A model generated the notes under the pieces. The model saw only the letters and a list, made by a program, of their open reading frames with translations. It ran no database searches and was not told the DNA's origin. From Pecten maximus (lineage: Eukaryota), in NCBI RefSeq assembly GCF_902652985.1, contig NC_047018.1, forward strand, positions 50,220,001-50,284,000: a stretch of 64,000 bases of DNA. The letters run 5' to 3'. Below, piece after piece: positions 4,680 to 60,313 of the stretch. Position 1 is the first letter of the stretch; every line of letters begins with the position of its first letter. The translations under genes and the position numbers were made by a program.

Positions 4680-4780
4680 GATCTGCCGACAAACTGTGAC
4701 GACTATACCCGTCACAGATAACACTTTATTGAAGGGGAGAGGACGTTCATTACAGCCTCTCATAATATCGACCTATACAG
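4680..4780 (+). other. Candidate non-coding first exon of SELENOP
   Basis: Strong donor CAG|GTAAGA at 4780/4781. The ATG-containing SELENOP exon starts at an acceptor (TTTCAG|, 8887), so an upstream exon is expected. The start coordinate is a guess. Confidence 0.3.
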
Positions 4781-5569
4781 GTAAGAATTATAACTATAAA
4801 ACAATTAGGATAACATATTATATTATAATCTAGTGTGAATGTTTTAAGTTTTTCGTCGGAACTTTCAGTTCCTTTTTCATTAAACAATACTTCTCTCTTT
4901 TTACGTAATTACCAAGTCTATAGATGTCCATTGATATTCTTATTCCATTTTTAAGACAATATAAACACTATAGGTGAATATAATCGTAAAAATAGCATTT
5001 CATAATTAACAATTTATTAATTGATACCAAAGTTATAATATAAATTTGAGAAATTTGTGACATGCGAAAAAGATAAGGTGGGGTATGGGTAGAAACAAAG
5101 TACAGCGACGGGAACAAGTGAGAGGCGGGGACAGGTGAGAAGTGGGTACAAGTTAGAGATGGTACAGGTGAGAGTTGGATACAGGTGAGAGTTGGGTGCA
5201 GGTGAGAGATTTGGGTACAGGTGAGAGATGGAACAGGTGAGAGATGTGTTTAGGAGAGAGTTGGGTATAGGTGAGAGACTGATACTGGAGAGAGATGGGT
5301 AGAAACGAAAGATCGGTACAACTGAGAGGTAGATATAGGTGAAAAGTTTGGTACAGGTGTCCTCATATGACCATAGCTGAATTAAGCCCCCCCTTACTAG
5401 ATAGTGCCCCTACACAGTGTCCCCCTACTAGATACTGATATCCATTTGTCAGTGGCTGTCTGTGTTTCCATCTACTCCAGTACAGGTACAGGGAAGGGAT
5501 TCGTCAAGGTAACACATGCGTCAGCTGAGATATGGATACAGGTATGAGATTTGTACAGGTGAAACATGT

Positions 5570-6958
5570 GTACAGGTAATAGAATGATGTGTACAGGTGA
5601 TAGAAGGATGTGTACAGGTGATAGAAAGATGGGTACAGGTTATAGAAAGATGGGTACAGGTGATAGATAGATGGGTACAGGTGATAGAAAGATGGGTACA
5701 GGTGATAAAAAGATGGGTACAGGTGGTAGAAAGATGGGTACAGGTGGTAGAAAGATGGGTACAGGTGATAGAAAGATTGGTACAGGTGATAGAAAGATGG
5801 GTACATGTGATAGAAAGATGGGTACAGGTGATAGAAAGATGGGTACAGGTGATAGAAAGATGGTTACATGTGATAGAAAGATGTGTGGTGATAGAAAGAT
5901 GGGTACAGGTGGTAGAAAGATGGGTACAGGTGGTAGAAAGATGAATACAGGTGATAGAAAGATGGGTACATGTGATAGAAAGATGGGAACAGGTGATAGA
6001 AAGATGGGTACAGGTGGTAGAAAGATGTTTACATGTGGTAGAAAGATGGGTACATGTGATAGAAAGATGGGAACAGGTGATAGAAAGATGGGTATAGGTG
6101 ATAGAAAGATGGGTACAGGTGGTAGAAAGATGAATACAGGTGATAGAAAGATGGGTACATGTGATAGAAAGATGGGAACAGGTGATAGAAAGATGGGTAC
6201 AGGTGGTAGAAAGATGGGTACAGGTGGTAGAAAGATGGGTACAGGTGGTAAAAAGATGAGTACATGTGATAGAAAGATGGGTACATGTGATAGAAAGATG
6301 GGTACATGTGATAGAAAGATGGATACAGGTGGTCGAAAGATGGGTACAGGTGGTAGAAAGATGGGTACAGGTGGTAGAAAGATGGGTACAGGTGATAGAA
6401 AGATGGGTACATGTGATAGAAAGATGGGTAAGGTGATAGAAAGATGGGTAAAGTGATAGAAAGATGGGTACAGGTGATAGAAAGATGGGTACAGGTGATA
6501 GAAAGAGTGGTACAGGTGATAGAAAGATGGGTACAGGTGATAGAAAGATGGGTACATGTGGTAAAAAGATGGGTACAGGTGGTAGAAAGATGGGTAATGT
6601 GATAGAAAGATGGGTACAGGTGATAGAAAGATGAATACAGGTGATAGAAAGATGGGTACAGGTGGTAGAAAGATGGGTACATGTGGTAAAAAGATGGGTA
6701 CAGGTGGTAGAAAGAGGGGTATAGGTGATAGAAAGATGAATACAGGTGATAGAAAGATGGGTACATGTGGTAAAAAGATGGGTACAGGTGGTAGAAAGAT
6801 GGGTACATGTGATAGAAAGAGGGGTATAGGTGATAGAAAGATGGGTACATGTGGTAGAAAGATTGGTACAGGTGATAGAAAGATGGTTACAGGTGATAGA
6901 AAGATGGGTACAGGTGATAGAAAGATGGTTACAGGTGATAGAAAGATGGGTACAGGTG
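5570..6958. repeat. 21-bp purine-rich minisatellite, about 65 copies, with degenerate flanks ~5100-7320
   Basis: Unit GATAGAAAGATGGGTACAGGT. It produces the spurious MGTGDRK, YPSFYHL and PVPIFLS ORFs. Confidence 0.95.
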
Positions 6959-8011
6959 AGGGATAGATACAGGTCAGAGATTAGTACAAGAGAGGGTTTG
7001 GCACAGGTGAGATGCCTTTTTGATGGATACAGGTTAGGGATATTTACAGGTGAGTGGCATAACAGGTGAAGGATAGATACAGGTGAATGATTGGTAAAGG
7101 TGAGAGTTTGTTACAAATGGGAGATGGGTACAGGGGTGAGATTTGTACACGTGAGGAAGGGATACAGGTGAGAGATGAGTTCAGGTGAGGGATGTCTACA
7201 GATAAAGGGTAAGCCAAGGTGATAGATATATACAGAAATGGATACAGGGGTGAGACTTGTACACGTGAGAGAGGGATATAGGTGAGAGATGAGTTCAGGT
7301 GAGGGAGAGATACAGATGAGAGTTTGTTTGATAAAATGAAACATAATTTGCATATAAACCTCGTTACTCCTATTGATGAAAACATTATCGGGTAAATATA
7401 ATAAACACATACAAAATGAAAAAGACTAGACAGATCAATTTCCGTTGATTTGAATTATCCGAATTCAACGTCGTAGCTGTTCTACCTTGTGTGTACGTGA
7501 TAAAGGGTCAGTAGCGGTCAGATAAGTCTCACAAACAATGAGTATACACTATGGAATTTGCTCCCCACAGTACAATCAACATGTCCACGTGATTACCCAA
7601 CCTTTAAAACAATATAAACAAGATAAGAATACTGTAATTGGGTCATTTATCAACAGTAAATTTATTAAAATTAGGTGATAATGACATAATTAATACAAAT
7701 TTTCAGTCATGGGCGAAGTATTTTAGTGCATCTAAACATTTATATACCATCCTGGTCTAAGTCAAGTACCACCGGGACTTGTCGAAATCCCCAACCGCGC
7801 GGTCCGTATATCTATATCCAGAATAAGCTGGGTTGGGAATTTGTATCAAAGTCCCTGTGATGAATACAATGAAATGCTAACTTTTCTTTTTTCCTCTCCG
7901 TATATAGGTGAACATCAAACTCAATACGTATATACTATATACTATTTTTACTACGTAATTGGCCTGCTAACCAGTTATCGTTCCCAATTCTTAATTTTTG
8001 CTCTCCAATAC

Positions 8012-8141
8012 CAGTTGCCAGGTACTGACCGTAGGCCGGTGGTTTTTCTCCGGGTACTCCGGCTTTTCTCCACCTCCAAAACCTGGCACGTCCTTAAATG
8101 ACCCTGGCTGTTAATAGGACGTTAAACAAAAACAAACCAAA
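8012..8141 (+). mobile_element. 5'-truncated copy of the same SINE
   Basis: CAGTTGCCAGGTACTGACCGTAGGCCGGTGG...GGACGTTAAACAAAAACAAACCAAA, flanked by CTCCAAT at 8003 and 8142. Confidence 0.88.
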
Positions 8142-8609
8142 CTCCAATGCTCCTTCTAAAACCTGTTTCATACAATTTCCTATGTAATGAAAACTCATTT
8201 TAGATCCTATATCAATCACGGAATGTTATTAATTATATTTGTACTTTGTACAATTATTTGATATTGCTGGACGATTAGCTCTGTTTGTGTACAGTGTTTT
8301 ACCAAAATATATCATTATCCATCTTTGCTATCCAAGGGTTCATTTCGTATTCACCTTTAGCTAGCGTAGATGGCTATGGAGTACCCTGTAAGAAACTTTT
8401 AAATATTATGAATATTGGCACCAATGCTGAATCCACACAGAATTCCATCTCTTAGTACCAATAGGAGAAAACAGCTGTATACAAAGTAATATTATATATA
8501 TTTCCTCAGTTCAGATACACAAATGCTGTACTCTTTCATGTGTATAAATGTAAGCTTATTGATTTTTCAACAATTCCGAAACAGGTTATACCAACTTATA
8601 TCTTATTTA

Positions 8610-8745
8610 TCAATCTTGTTGGCCCGGATGTAAGCGCATAAAAGGTCTTACTGTGGGAGGAAACCGGAGTACCCGGGGGAAACCCACGTGGTCGGGCAGG
8701 TGACCCCATATCTTTTCACGTCCGATCGGGGAACCTAACCCCACG
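8610..8745 (-). mobile_element. Fragment of a second SINE family with V-domain-like core
   Basis: GGGAGGAAACCGGAGTACCCGGGGGAAACCCAC is the reverse complement of the V-type core; its flanks differ from the first family. Confidence 0.6.
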
Positions 8746-8901
8746 TGGACGTCAGATCTCCAAGATGTTCATTATCGCTGCCAGATTAGAACTTGACCGA
8801 AAGGTTTCCAAGAGGCTTTTTATCGCTGTCTTTTTCTTGTCGAGTAATTGCTGATTGGTGATGTTCTCCATATTTCTCTGTTTCAGGTGGAAATACTAAA
8901 A

Positions 8902-11900
8902 ATGCGGGGCCCCGGCCCTTTGCTGGTCGTGTGGTTAGCCGCCATTCTCGTTGCTTCCGCGGGTGCTCGACGCTGTGCCCGTCCCCCAGTTTGGAGGACG
9001 GTGAACGGCACGAGCCCCATGCTGGAAACGGAAGGCAACGTACGTTTGGTGGCTCTACTGAAGGCCAGCTGAGGTTTTTGTGTGAGAGTCGCCATGACGT
9101 AAGTACTTGTGAAAATTTCAAGATCGACCCTCATAGCTTATTAAAGCGCAAGAGATTGACCTGAAATGATATTCATGCTCCACCCTTTCTCACATATTCA
9201 AAATACAAAATGGGATCGCTGAAGATAACGTATTGGAATTATTGGGCAAAAAAAAGGCCAAATCGACTGAAATATCAAGAAAGTTTTTCTCAAGACCTGA
9301 ATAAGGTAGAATCAAATACTCTTCATCAGATAGAAGGGTCTAAAGGTGCTTTACCAAAATTGTGAATTTCATGATGCTCACGTTTGCCCTGGGGAGGGGA
9401 TAAACTTTTAAAAAGTTTATATTGGGAAATCACAATTTTGACTATCGTTTGTTTGATTTATATTAATTCATTCTAACTTTGTAAACATTATCAGTATGGA
9501 ATGATAGCTTGAAGGGCACATGTTGGCCCTGACTGACCCCCCCCCGGGAATGATGGGCGGGGCCAAAAAGGGTCGGTTAAATTAACTCAAATATTTCAAA
9601 ACTCAGGTGACCGTTAAGGCCCATGGGCCTTTTGTTTAGATATCGGTTAAACCTACTTCTAATAGATCTATAGTTGCACAATTATGTTTGTTTTAGGCTC
9701 GAGCGTATCCGATCTAGGTTCGAACGCCGTGGCCTAACTGGTTTCGAATTCATGATTGTTAACATGAATCTCGATGAAGCTCAAGAGCAAGTCGAGAATC
9801 TTCGAAACGTCGTGAACGAAGCAGAAATGCCCATTTACCAGGATAACGACCAACTGGAAATATGGAAAAAACTTGGAGGAGACAAAGACTATCTCTACAT
9901 TTATGACGGGTAAGCATATGGGTTACTATAGCAACACTAGAGTGTTTATATGGCGGGAGAACGCTTAATTAGATAATGAAACCATAATAGTTTATTATTC
10001 ATCTAAGACAGAGTTGAGTTCAAAGACGTATTTTGATTGGCTAAATTATGGATATGGAATTTGAATTTTAGAAAAGCCGGTTGCATCCACCATGTTAATT
10101 TCGTCCAAGTTCAATTTTGAGATTAGGCACATGTCCTCACTTATAAAACAAAAGTTATTTTTATGTAACCACATTTTACAATACCTGCAACCTCCAGAAA
10201 AGATTAAATTCTTTGAAAAAAAACTAACCATATTAAGATTTATGATCCATTATGTTTCTTTTTTCTGGTTGGCCAATTTGATCTGCTAATTCATTGGTAT
10301 TTAACTGTAGAATATAGAAAATATCATATTTCAATTAGAAGTGAAAAAGAGGCCAAGTGGGCCTACATCATTTACTGGGATATATTTCAGTGATCATGGC
10401 AAAACACTATCATAAATGTTATATTGAAAATATTTTCCGATTTCTTGTATCTGTATCTCCTAAGGCTGGTTCAGACATAGTATCCTCCATTAATAAAACA
10501 TGCGATCTTCTCCCAGTAATGTTACAGAACTAAATCTGATAAAAATCCAGTCCTTTTGGATTAGTAGCGTTTAATGGGATTTAGCTCTGTATCCCCTATT
10601 TCGCCATCCCCTCTGAAAACATAGTAGCCACACTCTCAGACAAAATATGATCACTATCCGTTAAGCCGTTCATGAGTCGTAGTAACTCACATGGCATTTT
10701 GACGGACGACGGCCGCTGGCCATGACATTTAAGTTCACCAGTCCTTCAGACCAGGTGAGCAAATAAATGTATGTTATCTTGTCGAGCGTGATAACCATGT
10801 ATTTCGTTTTTGTTTTCAGTTGTGGAATGCACCGATATCTGCTGACATCTGATGATATCTTAGACCGCGATCAAAATTCCATTAATATTCGTCTGATCAA
10901 ACGGCGTCTACGTCAGGTGACACGACGCGACCGGTGTGCTAGGCAGTGTCGGCGGTACAGACGCCGCCTCATGTCCGCGGAGGACATGGACCGGATGCAG
11001 GGACACCAACCACATGTCGTGTCAATGTCTCGTGGAAGAAGTTCCAGCGCAGACGAAAACCGGACACCAACGTGTATGGAGCGGAATTGTCGTGGACGAA
11101 ACACTCCGCAAAGTAGACATAGAATGATCCACCGGATGTGACGTCACATGCGGAGACGAGGACTTGTTGGAGATTCGACACAATCTTGATTGTGTCCGCG
11201 CAACTTCCGGGACGAATGTTCGTGTACACGTTATCGTCAATCAAGTAGAACGCGTTTCTGCGCATGCTCTGAAATCACACCTGCTATTAGCGTGCGCTGT
11301 CTTTGATATGACTGTGACGCGTTCGTTGACGGACATGACGTAGATATTCCGCGCGTCCGACCGTCTTGACGACTGTTGACCAGCTGACACTGTGACACTG
11401 ACGATCATTTCCAGTCGGCAACGTGTCAGTGACCGACGGGCCAGTCGACTGACGTCGCCAGGTCGGCGTCAGTCTCCTGATCTTGTGAGGTGGGCGTCTG
11501 CGTATGACAGGGAACTAACGAGTCGTGTATGTGACGATCAACTGACACTGGGACGTCATGAGAATGACATTCGGACGCGACGTCATGTTTTTGACCTAGC
11601 GACGCGTCTCACGGTGACATGTGACATTGTCAGACGACGTCTACTGGCGTCAGCGACAACTCTTGACAGTGACACGGACAGGAAAGTGTCGGAAGTAGCG
11701 ACAGTATCGTCTGAGACTGACAACACACGACAGGAAACTGTCACTGAAACTGCGAGGTTTCCAGAAATGGAAACCTTCAGTGTCAATGACCGATAGGTCC
11801 AACTCCAACCGCAGTTGTTCACTGACGAACCGGAAGTGACACCGGAAGTAGATGACATTGACCAACAACCGTAACAACTGGGAAAACCTGAGAATGCGCT

Positions 11901-12302
11901 TCACGTCGCAACGGCCAACAAGGTCCTTGCACGTGAGGCACCGACCAGCAGACGTGCAGGTGACAGTCCTTGACGTCTGATATGACATCCGACGTAACAT
12001 GACAGTGCGACGGGCAGAACGACACATCAGAAATGTGCACGTGACCAAGTCTGTCTGGTCATCCAGATGGCACGTGACACTGTCACTCCGTCAGCACGGA
12101 CTGACAATGACAGGGTCTGACCACAGACGGAAGCATCTGACAGGAGACTGGGATCGTGGGCGCGCCCGTGTGACCTTGACAACAACGATGACAATGACCC
12201 GTCGCCACGTGACAATGACGTAGCAGCCGGAACGGGAAGTCGCTTTGACTTTGACAGTCGGCTGGACAGAACTGACAATGATCGGGGTCACATTTACAGT
12301 AA
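8902..12302 (+). CDS. SELENOP: Selenoprotein P, about 630 aa, 42 in-frame TGA (Sec); exons 8902-9098, 9697-9909, 10820-12302
   Basis: Signal peptide, then C..PPVW....GTSPMLETEGNVRLVALLKAS-U(TGA 9070)-GFC, the SELENOP UxxC motif. Exon 2 reads ...PIYQD..LEIWKKLGGDKDYLYIYD and splices to GCG (family DFLIYDRCG). Both introns are GT-AG and phase 2. Lengths 197+213+1483=1893 nt, ending TAA at 12300-12302. Two SECIS elements lie downstream. Confidence 0.95.
10820..12302 (+). CDS. SELENOP: SELENOP last coding exon: Arg-rich linker plus Sec-rich tail with 41 TGA
   Basis: GC-rich island in an AT-rich background. The frame carries 41 TGA (first at 11139) and no TAA/TAG before 12300. The TGAs sit in CxC-like motifs interchangeably with TGT/TGC. 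Confidence 0.93.
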
Positions 12303-12643
12303 ACATTAGATTTAAATCACGCAACTAACTTTCCATTCCGATGTCTGAAAAATATTTTAAAAATTAACAACATTGTAAAAAAACTATACATGTAAATATT
12401 GAAAAGATGCAAGATTTTTTTCTATCAAAAATATTGAAAGTTACGTAAACAAAAATATTGAAAGTTACGTAAACAAAAATTTTAAATCGTTAAAACAAAA
12501 CATCGTCGCTTCCGGTAACAATTTGGTAACTTGGTAAGGGCATTCAATGAGTAGACTAAATGTACCCCCTGCAACTGACCGAAACAAGACATATATACAT
12601 TTATATCTGTATCCGTAGTCTCAAGGACGACTTGACCATACAG

Positions 12644-12714
12644 TGGATAGCCTAAATGACGGCATTTGGACAAAACCCAAAAGGTATCCAATGCTCAGAT
12701 AACCCGGCTGACCA
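12644..12714 (+). promoter_or_regulatory. SECIS element 1 (canonical AUGA core, form II)
   Basis: Helix I TGG.TAGCC/GGCTG.CCA. Core ATGAC (12656-12660) opposite AGAT (12697-12700). Helix II GGCATTTGGA/TCCAATGCTC with two bulges. AAAA at 12672, 11 nt after the core, then an apical mini-stem ACC/GGT. Confidence 0.88.
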
Positions 12715-12992
12715 GATGGCCAAAGCTCTGATCTGACATTACTGATATCACTAAAGAAATGGACCATCTTACGACAATTAAAATAGTACTGTCGTAGACA
12801 GTGTAATAGATGTGAGCGTGGAAGGAAGTGTTAGAGTGCTTGCTGCTAAGAATGATGTACAATTGTTTGTTGAAATTTGTTATATTAACAACAAAATATG
12901 TTTGAAAACAAATATAATAAATCAAATATAAGGTTGGTTGTCGCTTTAGAAATGTCCGTCAGTAGCCAAAAATATCAAGAAGATAAAAATTT

Positions 12993-13240
12993 ATGGGTAT
13001 TCCCCAGTGACGTCACTGACCAAAAATATCAATAAGATAAACTTTATGGGTATTCCTCAGTGACGTCACAGGCCATGGGTATTCCTCAGTGACGTCACAG
13101 GCCATGGGTATTCCTCAGTGCCGCCACAGGCCATGGGTATTCCTCAGTGACGTCACAGGCCATGGGTATTCCTCAGTGCCGCCACAGGCCATGGGTATTT
13201 CTCAGTGACGTCACAGGCCATGGGTATTCCTCAGTGACGC
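12993..13240. repeat. 29-bp tandem repeat (7 copies plus one upstream copy) containing TGACGTCA
   Basis: Unit ATGGGTATTCCTCAGTGACGTCACAGGCC, located between the two SECIS elements. Confidence 0.92.
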
Positions 13241-13680
13241 ACGTGTATAAAAGTCGACCAAAACCCCATCTTCAAAGACCGGGGTCCAAAACCTGTGGTA
13301 CCGATTATTGTATATGTTTGATTTATTATAATAGTTTTAAATTGTTGTAAAATTATAAAAACAGGTTAGCCACAAATAAAGCACATGCAAAACGTGTTCG
13401 AAAAAATCAAGAGACGTTTATTTAAAATTTATCTATTTTTTTTTTAACAATTGACTTTCCAAAAGTGGAAGTTTTAACCGGATGGAGATTCCCACCCCTA
13501 AATCATTCGGTTTGGAAAATGTGACGACGCCTTTTTGTTTTGCGCATGTTTTGTTTGTGACTTTCCCTCATCAAGCCTCTGTGTTCACTGTAAGAATGAT
13601 TGTGTATAAGAAAGTTATATTATTTTATATAGAGTTCTAGTTCGTGAAAGCCTGTGTGAGAGTGTATGAGAGATGTTACA

Positions 13681-13781
13681 GTCGGTATGATACACCACAC
13701 GGCTCTGTGACGACCCGCTATAAAGCTAGGGATAGAAGTAGTGGAGTCTGAGAGATTTAGTCGACTGTGTATCATAACGAC
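13681..13781 (+). promoter_or_regulatory. SECIS element 2 (GUGA core variant, form II) inside a long closing stem
   Basis: Core GTGAC (13707-13711) opposite TGAG (13749-13752). Helix II GACCCGCTAT/GTAGTGG(A)GTC. AAA at 13722 and mini-stem CTA/TAG. Outer stem GTCGGTATGATACAC/GTGTATCATAACGAC, 14 of 15 paired. Confidence 0.82.
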
Positions 13782-13849
13782 TACACGGTGTATGGACAAA
13801 AACGCTTCCTTCCTTGTTCAATAGCAATGCTTATGTAAAAACATTATAT

Positions 13850-13855
13850 AATAAA
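13850..13855 (+). terminator. Candidate SELENOP polyadenylation signal
   Basis: First AATAAA after SECIS 2, followed by a U-rich tract at 13880-13905. Confidence 0.5.
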
Positions 13856-14383
13856 TATGATACAATACATATAAAAATGTCTTTCTTTCCTTTTTTTTTT
13901 TGCTCTATTTTTCATAACATACTTGTAAAGTTGGTAATTTTCGCGGGGATTAAATTTCGCAATTTTCGCAGTCATAAAGATAGCGCGAAATTAATTACAC
14001 GGTAAATATTTAACCTTAAGTTTAATCTCTGTGGCTGTATATTATACACAGGGCGATGTGTTTAACTGTTTACTGTCTTATTTCGATAAAGCGATGTTGT
14101 GCGAAATTTAATCCACGCGGACTGCTCAAAACCATGAGAACCGCGAAGTATTAGCACCATGCAAAATCAAACAGAATGTACACTGAATGGTTGGAGCCTG
14201 AAATGAAATTTTATACCCAGAACATAAAAAGTTTTGGCAAGCCGAAGTGGAAAGTTATCTTGGTTTATGTATGTTAGAAAACGGAGACTTTTTAAATTCC
14301 ATCTGCCATGGATTTCCATCAGTATTGTAGAGTGTTAATAGAGAGTAACGATAACAATACAATTTGGTGAATTTTAGCAGACA

Positions 14384-17493: not shown

Positions 17494-20379
17494 TCACAAT
17501 TCTCCTCCGTGAGGATCTAAAGTAGACTTAGATTCTGTAACCACAGTATCAGATTCATTATCCTCAACTGCTTGTTTAATATCTTCATAAATTTCTGCAA
17601 CAGACACCCAAGGACCCCAGGCATTTAGTAAGTATCCATTTCGATCAACAAGGTACTTCCAGAAATTCCAATTTGGTGGTTCTCCAGTCTGTTCTGTAAT
17701 TGCCATTAAAAAGATAATTATTTGATATGACAACATTCAGTTTGAAATGTTTTCTGATACTCCACAGGCAAAATGTCTTGTGGTAAATTTGACCTGAAAA
17801 AATATTCATATAAAATTCAGGTCAATTTCTTGATATGAATTGACTATTTTGATTAATTGCCCTTTCAGGTCAATTTTGAACAGAAAATATTGACCTGAAT
17901 TTGACGTGAATTGAAAAGAAGTCATTTTGTCTTTAAATGATACAATTTTATCAAAATCTGTTTAAACTTTACATTGTGACTTTAACAACATAAATTATTA
18001 ATACATTGTTTCTTTCTATTTGTTATCTTTCCAAAAAATTAAAACATTAAAATACTGTCTTTGCCACCTTTCTTACCTATGAGGTATTTCCATTCATCTG
18101 GCACATTGTCGTTGAGCACATTAACTTTGGCAAACATTGGAAAGTCAACTCTGTATGTGGACCTTGCAAACTTTTCTATTTCATAGTTGCTCTATAAAAA
18201 AGAAAATACAATGTAGATAATTCTTGTTATATGTCAACCATTCAAATGTTGGTGTTTATAACGAGGTTTTGTAAATCAGTGAGGAAAATGAAACATATCT
18301 TAGAAGTAAGTTATTTCATATACTCAAAAATGTGATAGCTTACAGGTTGGAAAGAAACATACATTGTACATAGATCTATAAGTCAGAATGTCACATGATG
18401 AGTATGCAGAATGTATAATTATTGAGAATGAGCCAAAACAAGATGGCCGTATTCAGTCCCATAATTATAAGAACGAATGTTACATACAAAATACAGAAGT
18501 TCAGCTGTCAACATGAAAAAATATGTGCAAACATGACATGTACATTTTACTGTTATTGAAGTGACTAAGTGAAAGAAACTCGTATCGTAACTGGCTATCA
18601 GCAAAACTATACCAAACTACAGGTGACAAAACAAAATATTACATATAAATGTAAATGTATTGACCAATCTTTTTACACTAAACTGATGGGTGAGAGCAGA
18701 GTTATAATGATTATATAATGTTGAAAAATATTGACCAAACTTTGCACCAAAAATGACAACTCACTTAATTCGTACACTCAGATAACTCGTAGTTTTCTTA
18801 TGGTCCTGTCAACTTCGAGTTAACGAAGTTCCACTTTACTTTTTATTAACCTTAGATACACTCAAAATTTTGGAGTGTGATAATTATGTATGTAACTTTC
18901 GATTTTCTTATTTTTAATCAATCATAATTATATTTTTGTCACAGGTGTAGCAACTGTAAACATAAACATTTTTCTACAATTCACTAAAAAACATTTAAAA
19001 GTTTATTACAGCAGGTTCCTGGGCTCCAAACTGATTGCAAGGAAATGCCAGCACGGTGAAATCCTCCTTTCTGTAAAACTCCTGCAGTCTGACTAAGCCT
19101 TTATAATGATCATCTGTAAATCCACATTCTGATGCCACGTTGACAATGAGGGAAACCTTTAAAACAAAAGTTATTGTAATATACATGTAAACATATCAGT
19201 ATTATGTAATATAATAAATAACACTGTCAACACATACTTTTTTATGAGATGACTAAACTCATAATTGATTATTAATTCCAATATATATATATCTATATGA
19301 AAATGACGATGAACATTTTATTCAATAATGTTTTCTAAAGTTTGATATATCTATAACAACTAGTTATGCACTGTAGAGCTAATTACTACTTCATTGTAAA
19401 GGGAAAATATGAATACACGTTTCAAATTTGGGAGCAAAACTCATCTAGTCATAGCAGAAAAACCAAATGCAACATGACATGGGTTTGGGAAACTACCCAA
19501 GTAACCAAACAATATCACTGCATGAGAATCCAGGTACATTTTGCCATTCAAAGGATTGATTATAGCTCCTGTCAGATTAATAGTCAAAGTTATGAAAGTA
19601 TCATTTTAATTCTTTCTCAAAAACAAAACTGCATTTGAAAGTAAAAATACTTCACTTAAATTAGTTTTATGTATAAATAGAGAATTATTTTCATAATATG
19701 AAAAACGAATGACATTAGTTGATTTGTGCTTTAGGCTAGTAAATTTGATCAGTGAAGTGGTCTTTACTGGAAAATGATAAATAATTTGTTGTAATGCAAT
19801 ATCATTTTTACAGAAAAAAATATATATTTAAAGTCTACATTTGTCTTATATCTGAAATTATAATGACTATAAGTGCTAAAACAGCAGTAATCATTGGAAA
19901 TATATAGAGGGTACTGTAAATGTATATGATTTCACAATAATATATTTTATATTATTTATTTACCATTGTAAATTACTAAATTAATAATAAAAATCGGCCT
20001 ACGCATGCTATCTAGATCTACATGTATGCTGAAACATCATTTTCGGTGCATGATGTACCTTTCCTCTGTATTGTTCTAATGAAATGGGATTTCCAGTTAT
20101 GTCAGTAGTATTAAATGAGTAAAAGTCTTTCTCTTCTGTTTCAAAATTAGTGTCATCAGCATTTAATTCGATTTCGTCGTCTGCATTTGTTGTCTCTTCA
20201 TCTGTTGTTGACGTTTCCGAAGTACTGCTTTCACTTTCATCGAGTGCATCTGTTGCAGTAAACTTCAGTATAGATACAAGTATGACGGTAACTGCAAACC
20301 ATCTCAAAAATGTCTTAAATGCTGTTTTTTTCTTAAACATGTTATTCTGCAACGTGTTAATGTTGTTGACGGAAGCCAT
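17494..20379 (-). CDS. GPX7: Cys-type ER glutathione peroxidase, GPX7/GPX8-like, about 260 aa; exons 20379-20059, 19156-19010, 18191-18077, 17693-17494
   Basis: Motifs LEQYRGK|[14 protein letters not shown] (catalytic codon TGT), [23 protein letters not shown] and [11 protein letters not shown]. Hydrophobic N-terminal anchor/signal and C-terminal HGGEL. Splice phases 0, 0, 1 give 783 nt. GPX7 versus GPX8 is not resolvable here. Confidence 0.92.
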
Positions 20380-36197: not shown

Positions 36198-39100
36198 TCA
36201 TTTGCCCTCCACCATCTTATCACGGATGATCACAGCCTCGTCAAATTCAATCATGAATGTTGTTCCCTTATGCCAATGAGCTGTCACTTTTGCCGGCTGG
36301 AAAATAATATAACAAGAATTAGTTTTATAGAGAGCTTTAAGACAAAAGTAGAAAGATTAGTCTATATTGACTCTCACATTCAGTACTCGTAGGAGAAATA
36401 AAAAAATTAAAATATATCTTAAATTCATAAGTCTAGTAAATGACTAAATTTTACATACAATATTTAACTGGACACATGTAAACTTTGCCCTTACGGAGGA
36501 AAAAACTTGTTTCAGGTTATAGAAGTTGTCTCAATTCGCAGAAATGAGATTAACCTGCATTCACTTGACTAATTGTAGTATAAGTTCAATCACTGTGTAG
36601 ACCAGTATCTCATCACAAGAAATCTTAGCATTTCAAGAATCTTATGTATACCCTCAAAATAGCCTCGTGAGTCCGAGCAGACCAAAGTACTGGCTGTCAG
36701 GGTCAAATTTATTGCGTGATATCAGGTTGAAACAACATACATGTAAGGCAGTGAATTAAAGCAAATTGGTTCAAGCCATTTATATAGGTCAAAGAGTCAC
36801 TGCCGACCTAAATATATCAGGTTAAAACCCTTTCTACAGGTCGATCAGTGACACCTCATCTAAATATATTGGGGTTCAAACCGTTTACAATGTATATAGG
36901 TCAATGAGTCACAGTTGACCTACATATATCGGGTTCAAACCATTTATATAGGTCAAAGAGTCACAGCCGACCTAAATATATCAGGGTTACCAAATCATTT
37001 ATTTATGCCATTGAGTCACAGCTGAGTTTAGCACATCAAGGTTTAAATATTTTAGGCCTATGAGTCGCAGGAGATTCGCTTTGATAGTGAGGTTAGTTCT
37101 GGACTTTATTATGATAATTAAGCTCAAGGGCTAGAAAAACCAAATACTTCTGAGTGCTATTTTGTAGTATGTGTGTCAGTGGGTTAATATTTGAAATAAC
37201 AGTCTGTCTTAATTAGTGTTCCTGCATGTTAATTAGCTATTGGCATGTGTTTTGTAGAACTGCAGGTATCCACACATTTACATTTCTTCTGAAATTCTAG
37301 AAATATTTGTCTACTTACGAAGTTGGCACCGTTTAATATGGCTTCTATGATTCCAGCAGTGAAAGCTGCACAGTTCAATTTGCCTGTCAATAAAAAAACA
37401 AGAATTATGACGACATGGAATTCCACACTATATACAGTGGTTACACAAAGAAAACTGAAAATATTTTCTAAAATGAAGGTTATCTTGAAATTGAAATCTC
37501 AGACCTCTAACATTTTAAATGAAGTGCTATGTGACAAAATGACATCACTTTCCTTTTAATGAATTGATCAATTTTATTTGTCTATTTAATCAATTTGCAT
37601 GAAAGAAATCAAAGAAAAACTTCAACAGCTCTAGTGAATAAATAATTTGAATAAAAGTTGACAGGCATGATAGACCAAGAGGCCCACAGGGCCTGCTATT
37701 CATTGTTCTAATAATGATGTGTGTACTGACTATATATTTTGATGCTTTTCAACGAAGATGTAACATATTTGATCCCTGTGATATTGAAAGTAGGTTAAGG
37801 TCATTCTTTGAATTTACATGGTAATCGTTCATCCCAGCATGCTACTTGGCCATTATCATGACCCTAGACCTAAAGAGCAAAGGGCCACAACTTTTAAAAT
37901 CAGATTGGTCCCAACTGTTTTTCATGAAAATTTATTCATATTTACTCAAGTCCAATGGTAGCAAAACTACAAAGGGCAATAACTCTGTAAGTTACACCTG
38001 AATTTGTCTGATCGAGGAACTTGTTCTGAAAATTTGTTGATGTAAGGCTGCAAACAACGTTTCATCAATTCTCACATGGGCTTATTTCAAAACACATACT
38101 TATTACAAAACATGGGCTTATTACAAAACACATACTTATTACCAAACATGGGCTTATTACAAAACACATACTTATTACCAAACATGGGCTTATTACAAAA
38201 CATGGGCTTATTACAAAACACATACTTATTACCAAACATGGGCTTATTACAAAACACATACTTATTACCAAACATGGGCTTATTACAAAACACATACTTA
38301 TTACAAAACATGGGCTTATTACAAAACATGGACTTATTACCAAACATGGGCTTATTACAAAACACATACTTATTACCAAACACATACTTATTACAAAACA
38401 CATACTTATTACAAAACATGGGCTTATTACAAAACACATACTTATTACAAAACATGGGCTTATTACAAAACACATACTTATTACCAAACATGGGCTTATT
38501 ACAAAACACATACTTATTACCAAACATGGGCTTATTACAAAACACATACTTATTACCAAACATGGGCTTATTACAAAACACATACTTATTACCAAACATG
38601 GGCTTATTACAAAACATGGGCTTATTACAAAACACATACTTATTACCAAACATGGGCTTATTACAAAACACATACTTATTACCAAACATGGGCTTATTAC
38701 AAAACACATACTTATTACAAAACATGGGCTTATTACAAAACATGGACTTATTACCAAACATGGGCTTATTACAAAACACATACTTATTACCAAACACATA
38801 CTTATTACAAAACACATACTTATTACAAAACACATACTTATTACCAAACATGGGCTTATTACAAAACACATACTTATTACCAAATATGGGCTTATTACAA
38901 AACATGGGCTTATTACAAAACACATACTTATTACCAAACATGGGCTTATTACAAAACACATACTTATTACCAAACATGGGCTTATTACAAAACACATACT
39001 TATTACCAAACATGGGGCTTATTACAAAACACATACTTATTACCAAACATGGGGCTTATTACAAAACACATACTTATTACAAAACACATACTTATTACAA

Positions 39101-42100
39101 AACACATACTTATTACCAAACATGGGCTTATTGCAAAACACATACTTATTACCAAACATGGGCTTATTACAAAACACATACTTATTACCAAACATGGGCT
39201 TATTACAAAACACATACTTATTACCAAACATGGGCTTATTACAAAACACATACTTATTACCAAACATGGACTTATTACAAAACACATACTTATTACCAAA
39301 CATGGACTTATTGCCTGATATACAGGTATATTCTGTCAGCTGGGTACCTGAGTTACACCAGCCAGATATCTACCAGATTCAAATTATCATCTGACACATT
39401 AATAAAACTCAAAACCGATTATCCAATTACATTATGTTTGTATGTCCCTGACATTGATTGTATTTGGGTCAAACTGTACAGTAAAGTAACCTACAATCTT
39501 ATCCCAAAGCTGCCTATGCTGTAACTGTCACTACGACTGTCGACTGTCGGTTAATTTGACTATATTGGATATACTCACCTTTATCTTTAGGTACAGATAT
39601 AAACCGGTTGACCAGGTGCTCGGATTCTATGATGTAATCTGAACTCAGGTTAAGACATATTTTTTTTTCCAAATTTTTTCATTATTTTTTTAATTTAATT
39701 TTTTTTTGTACTGACATAACCTTGTAACATGTATGTTTTATTAATAACATTTTCTATCTTAAAAAACCTAGAAGTATTATAAACATACTTATTATGGCAA
39801 TAGAAGAATATAGCTAAAACTCTTAATGATTTCTTAGGAAGCTGAGAAGCTCAGGAAATGGGCCAGTCTGTGTTGATGTGGCTGTGTCCTTGGGCAAGAC
39901 ACTTAACACTAATTTCTCTGGAACACATGCAACCGTCCTCTTGTATGTTGTTTAGTGAGGTAGTCACAAGCTACCACAATGAGACCCCGCCTCTACATGA
40001 CTCTGACAATTCACATGATAAGCAACCTAACAAACAAACTCAATAACTCAAACAAACAAACGCAATGAATTTGTTGAGACATAAAGGTAGACTCCTTCTA
40101 TTTGAGGATATTACAAAGGGGCATAACTCCCCAGAAATTCATCAAAATACATGTATATCACTTAAAGGCTAAAGTAACCACTATAGGTATAATCAGGAAC
40201 ACCAAGTTTTATTTGAATGGAATTCCAGGAGTAGTTCAACAGTACCAGGTAATATTACTCCCTAGACAGAATCCTGTCCAAAGATGGACACATTTACATG
40301 GACAAATCCACAGATATCCGATCTTCATTTTGAGGTTTACATGTCCAAAATTAGGGTGGGGTACAGTACGTGAGCTGACATTTTCAAAATTCTGCAAATT
40401 TACAGCATTGTCTTTTTTTAGGCAAAACTCAAATTTAATTATTCTCTTATCTATCTCACTATCATAGAACATTGATCAATATTAATAATCATGAAAAAAT
40501 GTAGCTTCAAAAATATATATACATTATAATTAAAATTCACCAGAAAATGTTACTGAATTGTCTGAAAGGAAATTTAGTTTTACCTCACATTATTATAGCT
40601 AATGGTATATTAGCTGACTGGTATCAGGAAATTAATCGACTTGCAGGTGTGATTCTACTAGTATTCATATGAACCCAATTTTATCTTGCTAATCTAAACA
40701 TGACACCAGCAGTTCATAAAAACAATTACTTACTCAAATTGGTTTCCTGCAACAGGCCTCGGCTGATATCACAGACACCAGAAAATTAACACATGGTTCA
40801 TACAGTAACCCCTCAGACTGGGACAGACCCTGACACACATGTGTAATAGTAGGAACTAGAAAATTAATTTTCATCAAATACAATGGCGGAATATTAAATC
40901 CAGGATTTCGTATCATACACGTAATACTCCATTCCCAGAAACAGGATTTAACATATATTCCCAAAAAACATTTTAATACTGAATTCAAACTTTAAATTAT
41001 TTTAATGTATTTAAGTGTTTACAAACACCTTTGAAATATTCCACTGAAATCAGCTAAAAAAAATTTGAAAAATATTGAAATAAAGAAAACAAAAAAAAAC
41101 AATTGAAAGTAATGTACTGCAATCACAAAGACCTCAGATGTAAATTTAACCCTTAATTATTGTTATTCTAGAATAATTATATATATAAGCACACCCCACC
41201 TTTTTATTTCAGGAAAAGAAGATTGGTGCTGAAATACAAATGTATACAAGAATTCCTATGACTCACTGATCTGTTTTAAATATTAATCTTCCATCTTTCA
41301 ACCAAAGACTCCGGATTGTTTTTGCTATATATACATAAAGCTACCGGTATGTAAATAAAAAAAAAACATAATTTTCCCCACCCAGATTTCACATGAGAAC
41401 TGTTTCCTATAAATAGTGTTACCAAGTGCAGTCCCTTTTAATGTGTTTTTGATAGCGAACAGTGTGCTTGTTTGGACAAATACGGTAACGATATGCATTA
41501 TGACCTTGAACCAGACTGAGCTAAAATAATGTCCTACATTTCTTCAGCCTGGTTACATAATTAAGCTCGTTATGATTATCGTATAACATAACAAGCATGC
41601 CTCTATTGTTATCCCAAGGATACAAGTTCTCTCATCATCGTTCGAGTGCTCCAGGGTATCGGCTTGCTTTCCGAAAAGAGTCTGAAACAGAAAAAAATAT
41701 TGAATCTTTATTAGTGGTGTTCTGATTAAACAAGTTCATTGAAATCCTCGTTTTTTTTTTCTGTCTAAAATTTTTTTGGTGTATATTTGAAAATGAAGCC
41801 TTTCAAAAGGAGTTCAGACTACTATTTTCATAAAAAAAATTTGTTTTGTTGATTTTCTGATGGTGAATCTTGCAATGAATAAATCAAAACACTTGTATGG
41901 AAATAAGAAAGAGTGTTATTTTCTTTGAGTACAGAATTAGCATGCTACAAATATTGATTTCTCTCATTATACCATTTTCTTAGTACCTGTATTTTTCAGA
42001 CAGGGTCATATTTGAGCATATTTGGGATTTTTTGTCAAATAATCTATTTGACGAAATATCTTTTTTCTTTCAAATTTTGGCTCTTCATGACCTAGATAAT

Positions 42101-60171: not shown

Positions 60172-60313
60172 NNNNNNNNNNNNNNNNNNNNNNNNNNNNN
60201 NNNNNNNNNNNNNNNNNNNNNNNNNNNNNNNNNNNNNNNNNNNNNNNNNNNNNNNNNNNNNNNNNNNNNNNNNNNNNNNNNNNNNNNNNNNNNNNNNNNN
60301 NNNNNNNNNNNNN
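60172..60313. other. Assembly gap (142 N)
   Basis: Run of N. Confidence 1.

What the first reader, a model, noticed from the sequence alone, without database searches (positions are those of the whole stretch)
8902..13855. Hidden hyper-recoded gene: selenoprotein P with 42 UGA-Sec codons and two SECIS elements
The ORF track breaks this locus into short unrelated ORFs. With TGA read as Sec it is one spliced 630-codon frame. The last exon runs 494 codons with 41 TGA and no TAA/TAG before the final TAA, which neutral decay would not produce. Tail from 11139: URHMRRRGLVGDSTQSULCPRNFRDECSCTRYRQSSRTRFCACSEITPAISVRCLUYDCDAFVDGHDVDIPRVRPSURLLTSUHCDTDDHFQSATCQUPTGQSTDVARSASVSUSCEVGVCVUQGTNESCMURSTDTGTSUEUHSDATSCFUPSDASHGDMUHCQTTSTGVSDNSUQUHGQESVGSSDSIVUDUQHTTGNCHUNCEVSRNGNLQCQUPIGPTPTAVVHURTGSDTGSRUHUPTTVTTGKTUECASRRNGQQGPCTUGTDQQTCRUQSLTSDMTSDVTUQCDGQNDTSEMCTUPSLSGHPDGTUHCHSVSTDUQUQGLTTDGSIUQETGIVGAPVUPUQQRUQUPVATUQURSSRNGKSLULUQSAGQNUQUSGSHLQ*. 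Known: human SELENOP has 10 Sec, and very Sec-rich SELENOPs have been reported in bivalves (Pacific oyster about 46). The class is therefore known, but this member is likely missed or truncated by standard annotation. Inference: a secreted high-capacity selenium storage/transport or metal-binding protein.
Basis: partly seen in the sequence, partly recalled or inferred. Interest (0 to 1): 0.95.

Follow-up and report, generated by a model that had tools for sequence, protein, structure and literature searches.

The report
King scallop selenoprotein P gene
This is a real, expressed king scallop gene for selenoprotein P whose message carries 42 UGA "stop" codons read as selenocysteine; proteins of this kind are already known from bivalves, but the public annotation cuts this one down to a 179-residue "uncharacterized protein".

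Summary
Window 8902-12302 (+) holds three coding exons with GT..AG introns: 630 codons plus TAA. There are 42 in-frame TGA, one in a UxxC motif and 41 in the last 387 codons.

- **Family.** Exons 1 and 2 match Pfam SelP_N above its cut-off.
- **Expression.** Transcript contigs from four studies show both predicted junctions. They run unbroken through the TGA-rich tail into a 1.55-kb 3'UTR.
- **Selection.** Of 20 variants in those contigs, 16 are synonymous in this frame, and one changes TGA to TGC (Sec to Cys). An orthologue's overlapping ORF keeps all 14 Sec sites and all 9 Cys sites it covers.
- **SECIS elements.** Two SECIS-shaped hairpins lie in the 3'UTR (12656-12699, AUGA; 13707-13751, GUGA). 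They beat every shuffle in my rule-based scan. Neither Rfam nor models trained on this genome's GPx SECIS score them significantly.
- **Annotation.** RefSeq gives only XP_033738984.1, the 179-residue piece between UGA1 and UGA2.

Verdict: a new member of a known kind (oyster 46 Sec, other bivalves up to 132). It is worth an annotation fix and is of moderate interest. One unexplained extra is a strong SECIS-like hairpin inside the coding tail (12215-12270).

The parts
4763..4780 (+). 3' end of a non-coding first exon (5'UTR); its start was not determined
   Evidence: 15 loose letters ahead of 8884 in the transcript contigs match 4763-4777 uniquely in the window. They are followed by CAG|GTAAGA.
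8887..9098 (+). Exon with the start codon (ATG 8902), a signal-peptide-like N-terminus and the start of the SelP_N domain
   Evidence: Contigs begin at 8884-8887 behind a ...TTTCAG acceptor and end at 9098|GTAAGT. Pfam SelP_N scores 27.5 bits against a cut-off of 23.2.
9070..9072 (+). UGA 1, the Sec of the N-terminal U-G-F-C redox motif (codon 57)
   Evidence: Direct reading. The genome-wide SelP_N match reads through this TGA at profile positions 2-42.
9697..9909 (+). Second coding exon, the core of the SelP_N domain
   Evidence: Pfam SelP_N scores 41.3 bits, E 1.5e-10. Joints 9098>9697 and 9908/9>10819/20 appear in 4 of 4 runs.
10820..12302 (+). Last coding exon: an Arg-rich linker (10821-11138), then the Sec-rich tail, ending in TAA at 12300-12302
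   Evidence: Single contigs span 10819-12342 and 10819-12571.
11139..12299 (+). Sec-rich tail of 387 codons with 41 UGA and 23 Cys. There are 30 (U/C)-x-(U/C) pairs, and 32 of all 42 UGA are followed by C
   Evidence: Variants in the tail read S S S S S N S N in this frame and are almost all non-synonymous in the other two frames.
12279..12281 (+). Polymorphic Sec/Cys codon 624: TGA in the window, TGC in the transcript contigs of all four runs
   Evidence: 12281 A>C in X1, X3, X12 and X8, mapped to the codon.
12215..12270 (+). SECIS-like hairpin inside the coding tail; unexplained and possibly chance
   Evidence: It is the best hit of my rule scan in the whole window. Only 1 of 400 codon shuffles of the tail reaches its score. 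Rfam and the covariance models do not find it.
12303..13853 (+). 3'UTR
   Evidence: Contigs cover 12303-13075 and 13210-13853, and the adapter follows 13853 in X1. The break at 13075-13210 coincides with the 29-nt tandem repeat.
12656..12699 (+). SECIS 1 candidate (core to core): AUGA, a 9-bp helix II with one bulged U, unpaired CAAA, a 3-bp mini-stem and AGAU. Helix I spans about 12644-12716
   Evidence: A contig joins it to the coding tail (X8 record 22, 11728-13075). Model R3 gives only 9.2 bits, E 4.2.
13046..13239 (+). 29-nt tandem repeat (6.7 copies), each unit with the palindrome TGACGTCA, lying between the two SECIS candidates
13707..13751 (+). SECIS 2 candidate: GUGA core, a 10-bp helix II with one bulged A, unpaired AAA, a 3-bp mini-stem and UGAG. 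A long lower stem spans 13680-13782
   Evidence: Fold of -39.8 kcal/mol, z -2.5. Also. It is the best hit in the window with model R2, but only 15.6 bits, E 0.34.
13850..13855 (+). Last AATAAA poly(A) signal. Others lie at 12777 (ATTAAA), 12916 and 13375, between the SECIS candidates
   Evidence: Depth collapses after about 13853.

Best explanation
Window ~4780-13853 (+) is the single-copy selenoprotein P (SELENOP) gene of the king scallop, Pecten maximus. Its mRNA encodes a secreted protein in three parts: a thioredoxin-like SelP_N domain with a U-x-x-C redox motif, an arginine-rich linker, and a 387-residue tail. In the tail 41 UGA codons are redefined as selenocysteine, most of them in (U/C)-x-(U/C) pairs. 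By analogy with vertebrate SELENOP, decoding depends on the two SECIS hairpins in the 3'UTR. These recruit SBP2, eEFSec and Sec-tRNA(UCA), so that a ribosome which has passed the first UGA reads the rest processively. The UGA-C context at 32 of 42 sites, the weakest termination context in eukaryotes, should help. Shown here: the gene structure, its expression, its family membership, selection on the UGA frame, a Sec/Cys polymorphism, and Sec machinery in the genome. Inferred: actual Sec insertion at all 42 sites, secretion, and a role in selenium transport or storage, possibly with metal binding.
For: Gene model and counts. SelP_N matches over the cut-off on two exons. It is the only SelP_N locus in the 918-Mb assembly. 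Spliced contigs from four runs in four studies show zero depth in intron 9909-10656 and unbroken coverage of 10819-12571. Of 20 coding variants, 16 are synonymous where 22% would be expected (P 5.6e-8), and one is TGA>TGC. In-frame TGA enrichment has P about 7e-9 and was never reached in 20,000 shuffles. A +1-frame ORF of an unidentified relative found in public read assemblies (P0005, 68% identical, presumably another scallop) aligns without gaps: all 14 Sec sites keep GA at codon positions 2-3, and all 9 Cys sites keep G+T/C. Visible differences fall 28 at this frame's third position against about 9 at its second. ORFs called or annotated in Ylistrum balloti and Argopecten irradians, in Mizuhopecten yessoensis (P0006) and in read-assembly ORFs of its 90% cluster (P0003, P0007) all end at the column of UGA2. 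The two SECIS-shaped hairpins are the only rule-scan hits in the 3'UTR. No shuffle of 400 reached the weaker one's score. The same scan finds the SECIS of four Sec-GPx genes of this genome. Sec machinery is present. A tRNA-Sec(UCA) scores 77 bits, and there are at least eight GPx exons with an in-frame TGA, one with a SECIS over the Rfam cut-off.
Against: There is no protein-level evidence, so the fraction of ribosomes reaching codon 630 is unknown. Rfam SECIS_1 finds neither SECIS candidate. Covariance models trained on this genome's GPx SECIS score them at noise level (15.6 bits, E 0.34; 10.1 and 9.2 bits, E 2-4). SECIS 2 has GUGA instead of the usual AUGA. No single contig links SECIS 2 to the coding region, because assemblies break at the tandem repeat at 13075-13210. 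Cross-species evidence covers only 14 of the 41 tail UGAs, and it comes from an overlapping-frame protein, so TGA cannot be told from CGA at the DNA level. Three of the four runs are only guessed to be RNA, although the spliced joints and empty introns argue for RNA. The vertebrate-type SelP_C profile does not match.
Confidence: 0.92

Rival explanations
1. The gene and mRNA are real, but the main product is a short protein that stops at UGA2 (the N-terminal domain with one Sec) or at UGA1. The 41-Sec tail is made only rarely, for instance at high selenium supply.
For: From general knowledge of vertebrate SELENOP, isoforms ending at UGA2 and later UGAs occur in rat plasma. UGA2 is kept at the same column in four to five scallop species. 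Poly(A) signals between the SECIS candidates could give mRNAs with one SECIS, as described for human SELENOP (PMC5133445 abstract).
Against: The tail shows codon-level purifying selection within and between species, so it is translated often enough to matter. The UGA-C context at 32 of 42 sites favours read-through. All 41 stops are UGA and none is UAA or UAG.
Confidence: 0.15
2. The region after 11139 is untranslated 3'UTR or a decayed coding remnant, and its in-frame TGA pattern is a by-product of TGAC-rich repeats.
For: 4.3% of shuffles also lack TAA and TAG in frame. TGACG-type words are common in the tail and in the 3'UTR repeat.
Against: Tandem Repeats Finder finds no repeat array in the tail. 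41 of 58 TGA lie in one frame (P about 7e-9). Variants are synonymous only in that frame. Between-species changes concentrate at its third codon position, with all tested Sec and Cys sites kept. The tail has 53% G+C against 34% for the window.
Confidence: 0.02
3. The UGAs are translated, but largely as cysteine or another amino acid rather than selenocysteine.
For: Cys insertion at UGA is reported for human SELENOP (PMC4599804 title and abstract). The TGA/TGC polymorphism at codon 624 shows that Cys is tolerated there.
Against: The genome has tRNA-Sec(UCA), Sec-GPx genes and SECIS elements. Keeping 42 costly UGAs rather than TGY implies selection for Sec itself. Cys codons and UGA codons are each conserved as such at the 23 sites tested.
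Confidence: 0.04

Closest known systems
Pacific oyster (Crassostrea gigas) SELENOP, 46 Sec (Baclaocos et al. 2019, J Mol Biol 431:4381, as cited in PMC8230778)
   Same: A bivalve SELENOP with an N-terminal SelP_N domain carrying UxxC, tens of in-frame UGA in a C-terminal tail, and Sec decoding directed from the 3'UTR.
   Different: It comes from a different family (Pectinidae) and has 42 UGA in this genome, 41 in the four transcript data sets. I could not read the primary paper, so I cannot say whether any scallop was in its survey. No paper in the searchable library mentions a scallop SELENOP.
Human and other vertebrate SELENOP (10 Sec in human, two SECIS elements)
   Same: A SelP_N domain with a UxxC motif, a Sec/Cys-rich tail with (U/C)-x-(U/C) pairs, two SECIS-shaped hairpins in the 3'UTR, and poly(A) signals between them.
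   Different: This gene has four times as many Sec. The tail does not match Pfam SelP_C. An Arg-rich linker replaces the His-rich stretches. The distal SECIS has a GUGA core.
Record-holding SELENOPs: 132 UGA in a bivalve and more than 130 in lamprey (PMC13134290, section SELENOP)
   Same: The same architecture, with all internal stops being UGA. That paper uses this as its argument for selection.
   Different: The UGA count here is far lower. The lamprey 3'UTR has a CA-rich region between the SECIS elements, whereas here a 29-nt tandem repeat with TGACGTCA palindromes lies between them.

Membership tests
Selenoprotein P (SELENOP) | N-terminal thioredoxin-like SelP_N domain (Pfam PF04592) | tested here: met
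   Exon 1 scores 27.5 bits and exon 2 scores 41.3 bits, against a cut-off of 23.2. The same two exons are the only matches in the genome.
Selenoprotein P (SELENOP) | UxxC redox motif whose U is an in-frame UGA | tested here: met
   U57-G-F-C60, with TGA at 9070. The TGA lies inside the profile match 2-42.
Selenoprotein P (SELENOP) | Several further in-frame UGA in a C-terminal tail, with the frame closed by a non-UGA stop | tested here: met
   41 UGA in 387 codons, then TAA. The enrichment is far beyond the shuffles.
Selenoprotein P (SELENOP) | The tail is coding, with purifying selection in the UGA frame and Sec/Cys exchange | tested here: met
   16 of 20 variants are synonymous and there is one TGA>TGC. 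The orthologue comparison covers 14 Sec and 9 Cys sites.
Selenoprotein P (SELENOP) | Two SECIS elements in the 3'UTR | tested here: inconclusive
   Two hairpins have every formal SECIS feature and beat 400 of 400 shuffles. Rfam SECIS_1 gives no match and the GPx-trained models score E 0.34-4. As a control, Rfam finds only 1 of the four Sec-GPx SECIS tested in this genome at its cut-off.
Selenoprotein P (SELENOP) | Signal peptide (secreted protein) | tested here: inconclusive
   Read by eye only. MRGPGP is followed by a 12-residue hydrophobic core and then SAGA|RR. No predictor was available.
Selenoprotein P (SELENOP) | The mRNA is expressed, with the tail and the SECIS elements on one transcript | tested here: met
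   Contigs span 8884-12571 and 11728-13075, which includes SECIS 1. Coverage runs to 13853 except for an assembly break at the tandem repeat.
Selenoprotein P (SELENOP) | Selenocysteine actually inserted at the UGAs | not testable with these tools
   This needs 75Se labelling, Se-specific mass spectrometry or ribosome profiling.
Vertebrate-type SELENOP C-terminal domain (Pfam PF04593 SelP_C) | Sequence match to the SelP_C profile | tested here: not met
   No match at E<=1 in the whole genome with stops read through. The control rang nowhere, so the test is weak. This feature does not define invertebrate SELENOPs.
Sec-decoding organism | tRNA-Sec(UCA) and other selenoprotein genes with SECIS elements | tested here: met
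   tRNA-Sec scores 77.3 bits and has anticodon TCA. GPx exons carry an in-frame TGA, with SECIS hairpins downstream.

The most novel reading that the evidence does not exclude
The strong SECIS-shaped hairpin inside the coding tail (12215-12270, 30-90 nt before the stop) is functional. It would be an in-ORF third SECIS or recoding structure serving the very dense final cluster of UGAs. No such element is described for SELENOP in any paper I could read.
Probability: 0.08. Interest if true: 0.6.

Novelty: new member of a known kind. Interest (0 to 1): 0.35.

Why it matters
The finding corrects a public record. The king scallop's only SELENOP gene is listed in RefSeq as a 179-residue "uncharacterized protein", and the same truncation affects the Ylistrum, Argopecten and Mizuhopecten entries. 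The true product has about 630 residues and 42 selenocysteines.

It adds a well-supported pectinid example, with transcript, population and cross-species evidence, to the set of highly recoded SELENOPs. It also shows a segregating Sec/Cys site. It gives a concrete substrate for studying processive UGA redefinition and selenium handling in a commercially fished bivalve.

It does not reveal a new kind of system.

Tried and rejected
- **Rfam on the locus.** Scans at E<=1 over 8 kb and at E<=10 over the 3'UTR gave no SECIS match. I do not take this as evidence against. Rfam reaches its cut-off on only 1 of the four Sec-GPx SECIS tested in this genome, and a second scores 23.5 bits.
- **Own covariance models.** R1, R2 and R3 were trained only on GPx SECIS. 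R2 recovers the held-out GPx SECIS (E 4e-4 to 0.013). It ranks SELENOP SECIS 2 first in the window, but at E 0.34. R3 puts both candidates in the noise (E 2.2 and 4.2). This gives no significant support, and I report it as such.
- **Overlapping-frame searches.** The +1-frame ORF worked. The two minus-strand ORFs covering 11653-12278 found nothing, so 27 tail UGAs have no cross-species check.
- **Pfam on other parts.** The Arg-rich linker gave no family. SelP_C searched genome-wide gave nothing.
- **Primary paper.** Baclaocos et al. 2019 is not held. Statements about it rest on how PMC8230778 and PMC13134290 cite it.
- **Tail as a tandem-repeat artefact.** Rejected, because Tandem Repeats Finder finds no array there.
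- **Processed retrocopy as the source of the spliced contigs.** Rejected, because the genome has only this SelP_N locus, matched exon by exon.
- **Joined protein.** The spliced protein was never sent to a search or folding tool.


Full report
**Observation**

ATG at 8902 opens a frame that runs through three exons: 8902-9098, 9697-9909 and 10820-12302. All borders are GT..AG. The joined frame has 630 codons plus TAA. It contains 42 in-frame TGA and no other stop. One TGA is at 9070 and 41 lie between 11139 and 12281.

The last 387 codons were tested against chance.
- Of the 58 TGA trinucleotides in the tail, 41 fall in this frame (P about 7e-9).
- Dinucleotide shuffles average 13.4 in-frame TGA and never exceeded 28 in 20,000 trials.
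The tail is poor in those words in every frame, and 4.3% of shuffles lack them too.

**Family**

I searched exon by exon, by reference.
- Exon 1 (residues 21-56) matches Pfam SelP_N positions 2-36 with 27.5 bits.
- Exon 2 matches positions 47-116 with 41.3 bits. The curated cut-off is 23.2.
- The TGA at 9070 falls between these two matches, in the motif U-G-F-C. That is the redox motif of selenoprotein P.
- A six-frame search of the whole 918-Mb assembly finds SelP_N only at these two exons, so the gene is single-copy and has no retrocopy.
- The vertebrate SelP_C profile does not match.

The tail has 41 U, 23 C and many S, T, Q, G and D residues. Thirty (U/C)-x-(U/C) pairs occur, and Sec density rises towards the C-terminus while Cys density falls.

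**Expression and gene structure**

Contigs from four public runs in four studies were laid on 8600-14200. One run is on record as RNA and the other three are guessed to be RNA.
- All four join 9098 to 9697, and 9908/9 to 10819/20, across GT..AG.
- All four have zero depth over 9909-10656.
- Single contigs run unbroken through the TGA-rich tail (8884-12342; 8884-12571; 11728-13075).
- No joint removes any part of the tail.
- Coverage continues to 13853, just behind the last AATAAA at 13850. The only break, at 13075-13210, coincides with a 29-nt tandem repeat.
- Fifteen loose letters ahead of 8884 match 4763-4777, followed by CAG|GTAAGA. The gene therefore has a non-coding first exon and a 4.1-kb first intron.

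**Selection on the UGA frame**

The contigs carry 20 single-base differences inside the coding sequence.
- Sixteen are synonymous in this frame, where 22% would be expected (P 5.6e-8).
- The eight differences in the tail read S S S S S N S N in this frame. They are almost all non-synonymous in the other two frames.
- One of the tail changes, 12281 A>C, turns TGA into TGC in all four runs. This is a segregating Sec/Cys exchange, the signature change of selenoprotein genes.

I used a detour instead.
- The +1-frame ORF 11392-11793 found a 134-residue ORF of an unidentified relative in public read assemblies (P0005, presumably another scallop), 68% identical and aligned without gaps.
- Translated back to the SELENOP frame, all 14 Sec sites in that stretch keep GA at codon positions 2-3.
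- All 9 Cys sites keep G followed by T or C.
- The visible differences fall 28 times at the SELENOP third position and about 9 times at its second.
- This cannot tell TGA from CGA. An open SELENOP frame in the orthologue would, however, presumably have been called in place of the overlapping one.

**Annotation**

The piece between UGA1 and UGA2 is identical to RefSeq XP_033738984.1, 'uncharacterized protein LOC117326371 [Pecten maximus]', 179 aa. This identifies the organism and shows the truncation. Entries for Ylistrum balloti, Argopecten irradians and Mizuhopecten yessoensis are cut the same way, and all end at the column of UGA2.

**SECIS elements**

Two hairpins in the 3'UTR have every formal feature of a SECIS element.
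- **SECIS 1 (12656-12699):** AUGA, a 9-bp helix II with one bulged U, unpaired CAAA 12 nt after the core, a 3-bp mini-stem and AGAU.
- **SECIS 2 (13707-13751):** GUGA, a 10-bp helix II with one bulged A, unpaired AAA 11 nt after the core, a 3-bp mini-stem and UGAG. It sits on a long lower stem (fold -39.8 kcal/mol, z -2.5).

My rule-based scan gave these results.
- In all 128 kb of the window (both strands) it finds 16 hits. The top three all lie on the + strand of this gene.
- None of 400 shuffled 3'UTRs reaches the weaker candidate's score.
- A relaxed scan finds no competing hairpin in the 3'UTR.
- As a positive control, the same scan picks a hairpin on the gene strand downstream of each of four Sec-GPx genes of this genome.

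The model-based evidence is against, or at best neutral.
- Rfam SECIS_1 finds neither candidate. It also reaches its cut-off on only one of those four GPx SECIS elements.
- Model R2, trained on two GPx SECIS, ranks SECIS 2 first in the window, but only at E 0.34.
- Model R3, trained on five GPx SECIS, scores both candidates at E 2-4.

I therefore rate the two SECIS elements as probable, not proven.

**Mechanism**

The genome has what Sec decoding needs. It holds a tRNA-Sec with anticodon TCA. It also holds several GPx genes with an in-frame TGA and a downstream SECIS.

Thirty-two of the 42 UGA are followed by C. From general knowledge, this is the poorest termination context in eukaryotes.

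The most likely working follows vertebrate SELENOP. The SECIS elements recruit SBP2, eEFSec and Sec-tRNA. UGA1 is decoded slowly, and the later UGAs are then decoded processively. The product is a secreted protein whose tail carries up to 41 selenium atoms for transport or storage, and possibly for metal binding through its (U/C)-x-(U/C) pairs. Secretion, function and full-length synthesis are inferred, not shown.

**Comparison and novelty**

Sec-rich bivalve SELENOPs are known. PMC8230778 and PMC13134290 cite Baclaocos et al. 2019 for 46 Sec in oyster and 132 in another bivalve. I could not read that paper itself. The searchable library holds no paper on a scallop SELENOP.

This is a new, well-supported member of a known kind and a clear annotation error. 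It is not a new system.

**One unexplained item**

The best hit of my scan lies inside the coding tail, at 12215-12270. Only 1 of 400 codon shuffles of the tail matches its score. I give it about 8% as a functional in-ORF element.

**Limits**

- There are no protein data.
- Cross-species evidence covers only 14 of the 41 tail UGAs.
- No contig bridges the tandem repeat between the coding region and SECIS 2.
- The N run at 60172-60313 was left untouched.

Noticed in passing
window 12215-12270 (+): A SECIS-shaped hairpin lies inside the SELENOP coding tail: AUGA, 7+2 bp helix, unpaired AA, a 6-bp mini-stem and GA. It is the top hit of my rule scan in the window, and 1 of 400 codon shuffles reaches it. 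Rfam and the covariance models do not support it.
   Followed up: partly
window 19010-19168 (-): A glutathione peroxidase exon (Pfam GSHPx, 64.7 bits) has Cys instead of Sec at the active site (NVASECGFT). It lies about 5 kb downstream of SELENOP, in convergent orientation.
   Followed up: partly
window 12966-13239 (+): The 3'UTR carries tandem repeats between the two SECIS candidates: a 53-nt unit in 1.9 copies, then a 29-nt unit in 6.7 copies. Each unit carries the palindrome TGACGTCA, a CRE-like word. Transcript assemblies break there.
   Followed up: no
window 12426-12480 (+): A 24-nt tandem repeat (2.3 copies) varies in copy number. One unit is missing in the contigs of all four runs.
   Followed up: no
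window 8600-8786 and 9161-9721: Intronic and flanking stretches have contig depths in the thousands, many short contigs and irregular joints. They are probably high-copy interspersed repeats transcribed elsewhere in the genome.
   Followed up: no
window 38076-39521 (+): A 482-aa ORF matches the Pfam LED repeat (PF20854, 88.6 bits, three stretches).
   Followed up: no
window 5640-6850, both strands: Overlapping long ORFs (261-305 aa) lie on both strands inside SELENOP intron 1, with no Pfam match. They may be a repeat or a composition artefact.
   Followed up: partly
G000:C2:37503771-37523532 (L004, L007, L008, L009, L014): A cluster of at least five GPx exons with an in-frame TGA lies within 20 kb, on both strands, with near-identical SECIS hairpins. 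This is a tandem expansion of Sec-GPx genes.
   Followed up: partly
L011-L014 (GPx 3' regions): Rfam SECIS_1 reaches its gathering score on only one of four Sec-GPx 3' regions of this genome. A blank from Rfam is therefore weak evidence against a SECIS in this mollusc.
   Followed up: yes
G000:C11:21674355-21674440 (L015:1501-1587): A single clear tRNA-Sec gene with anticodon TCA scores 77.3 bits.
   Followed up: yes
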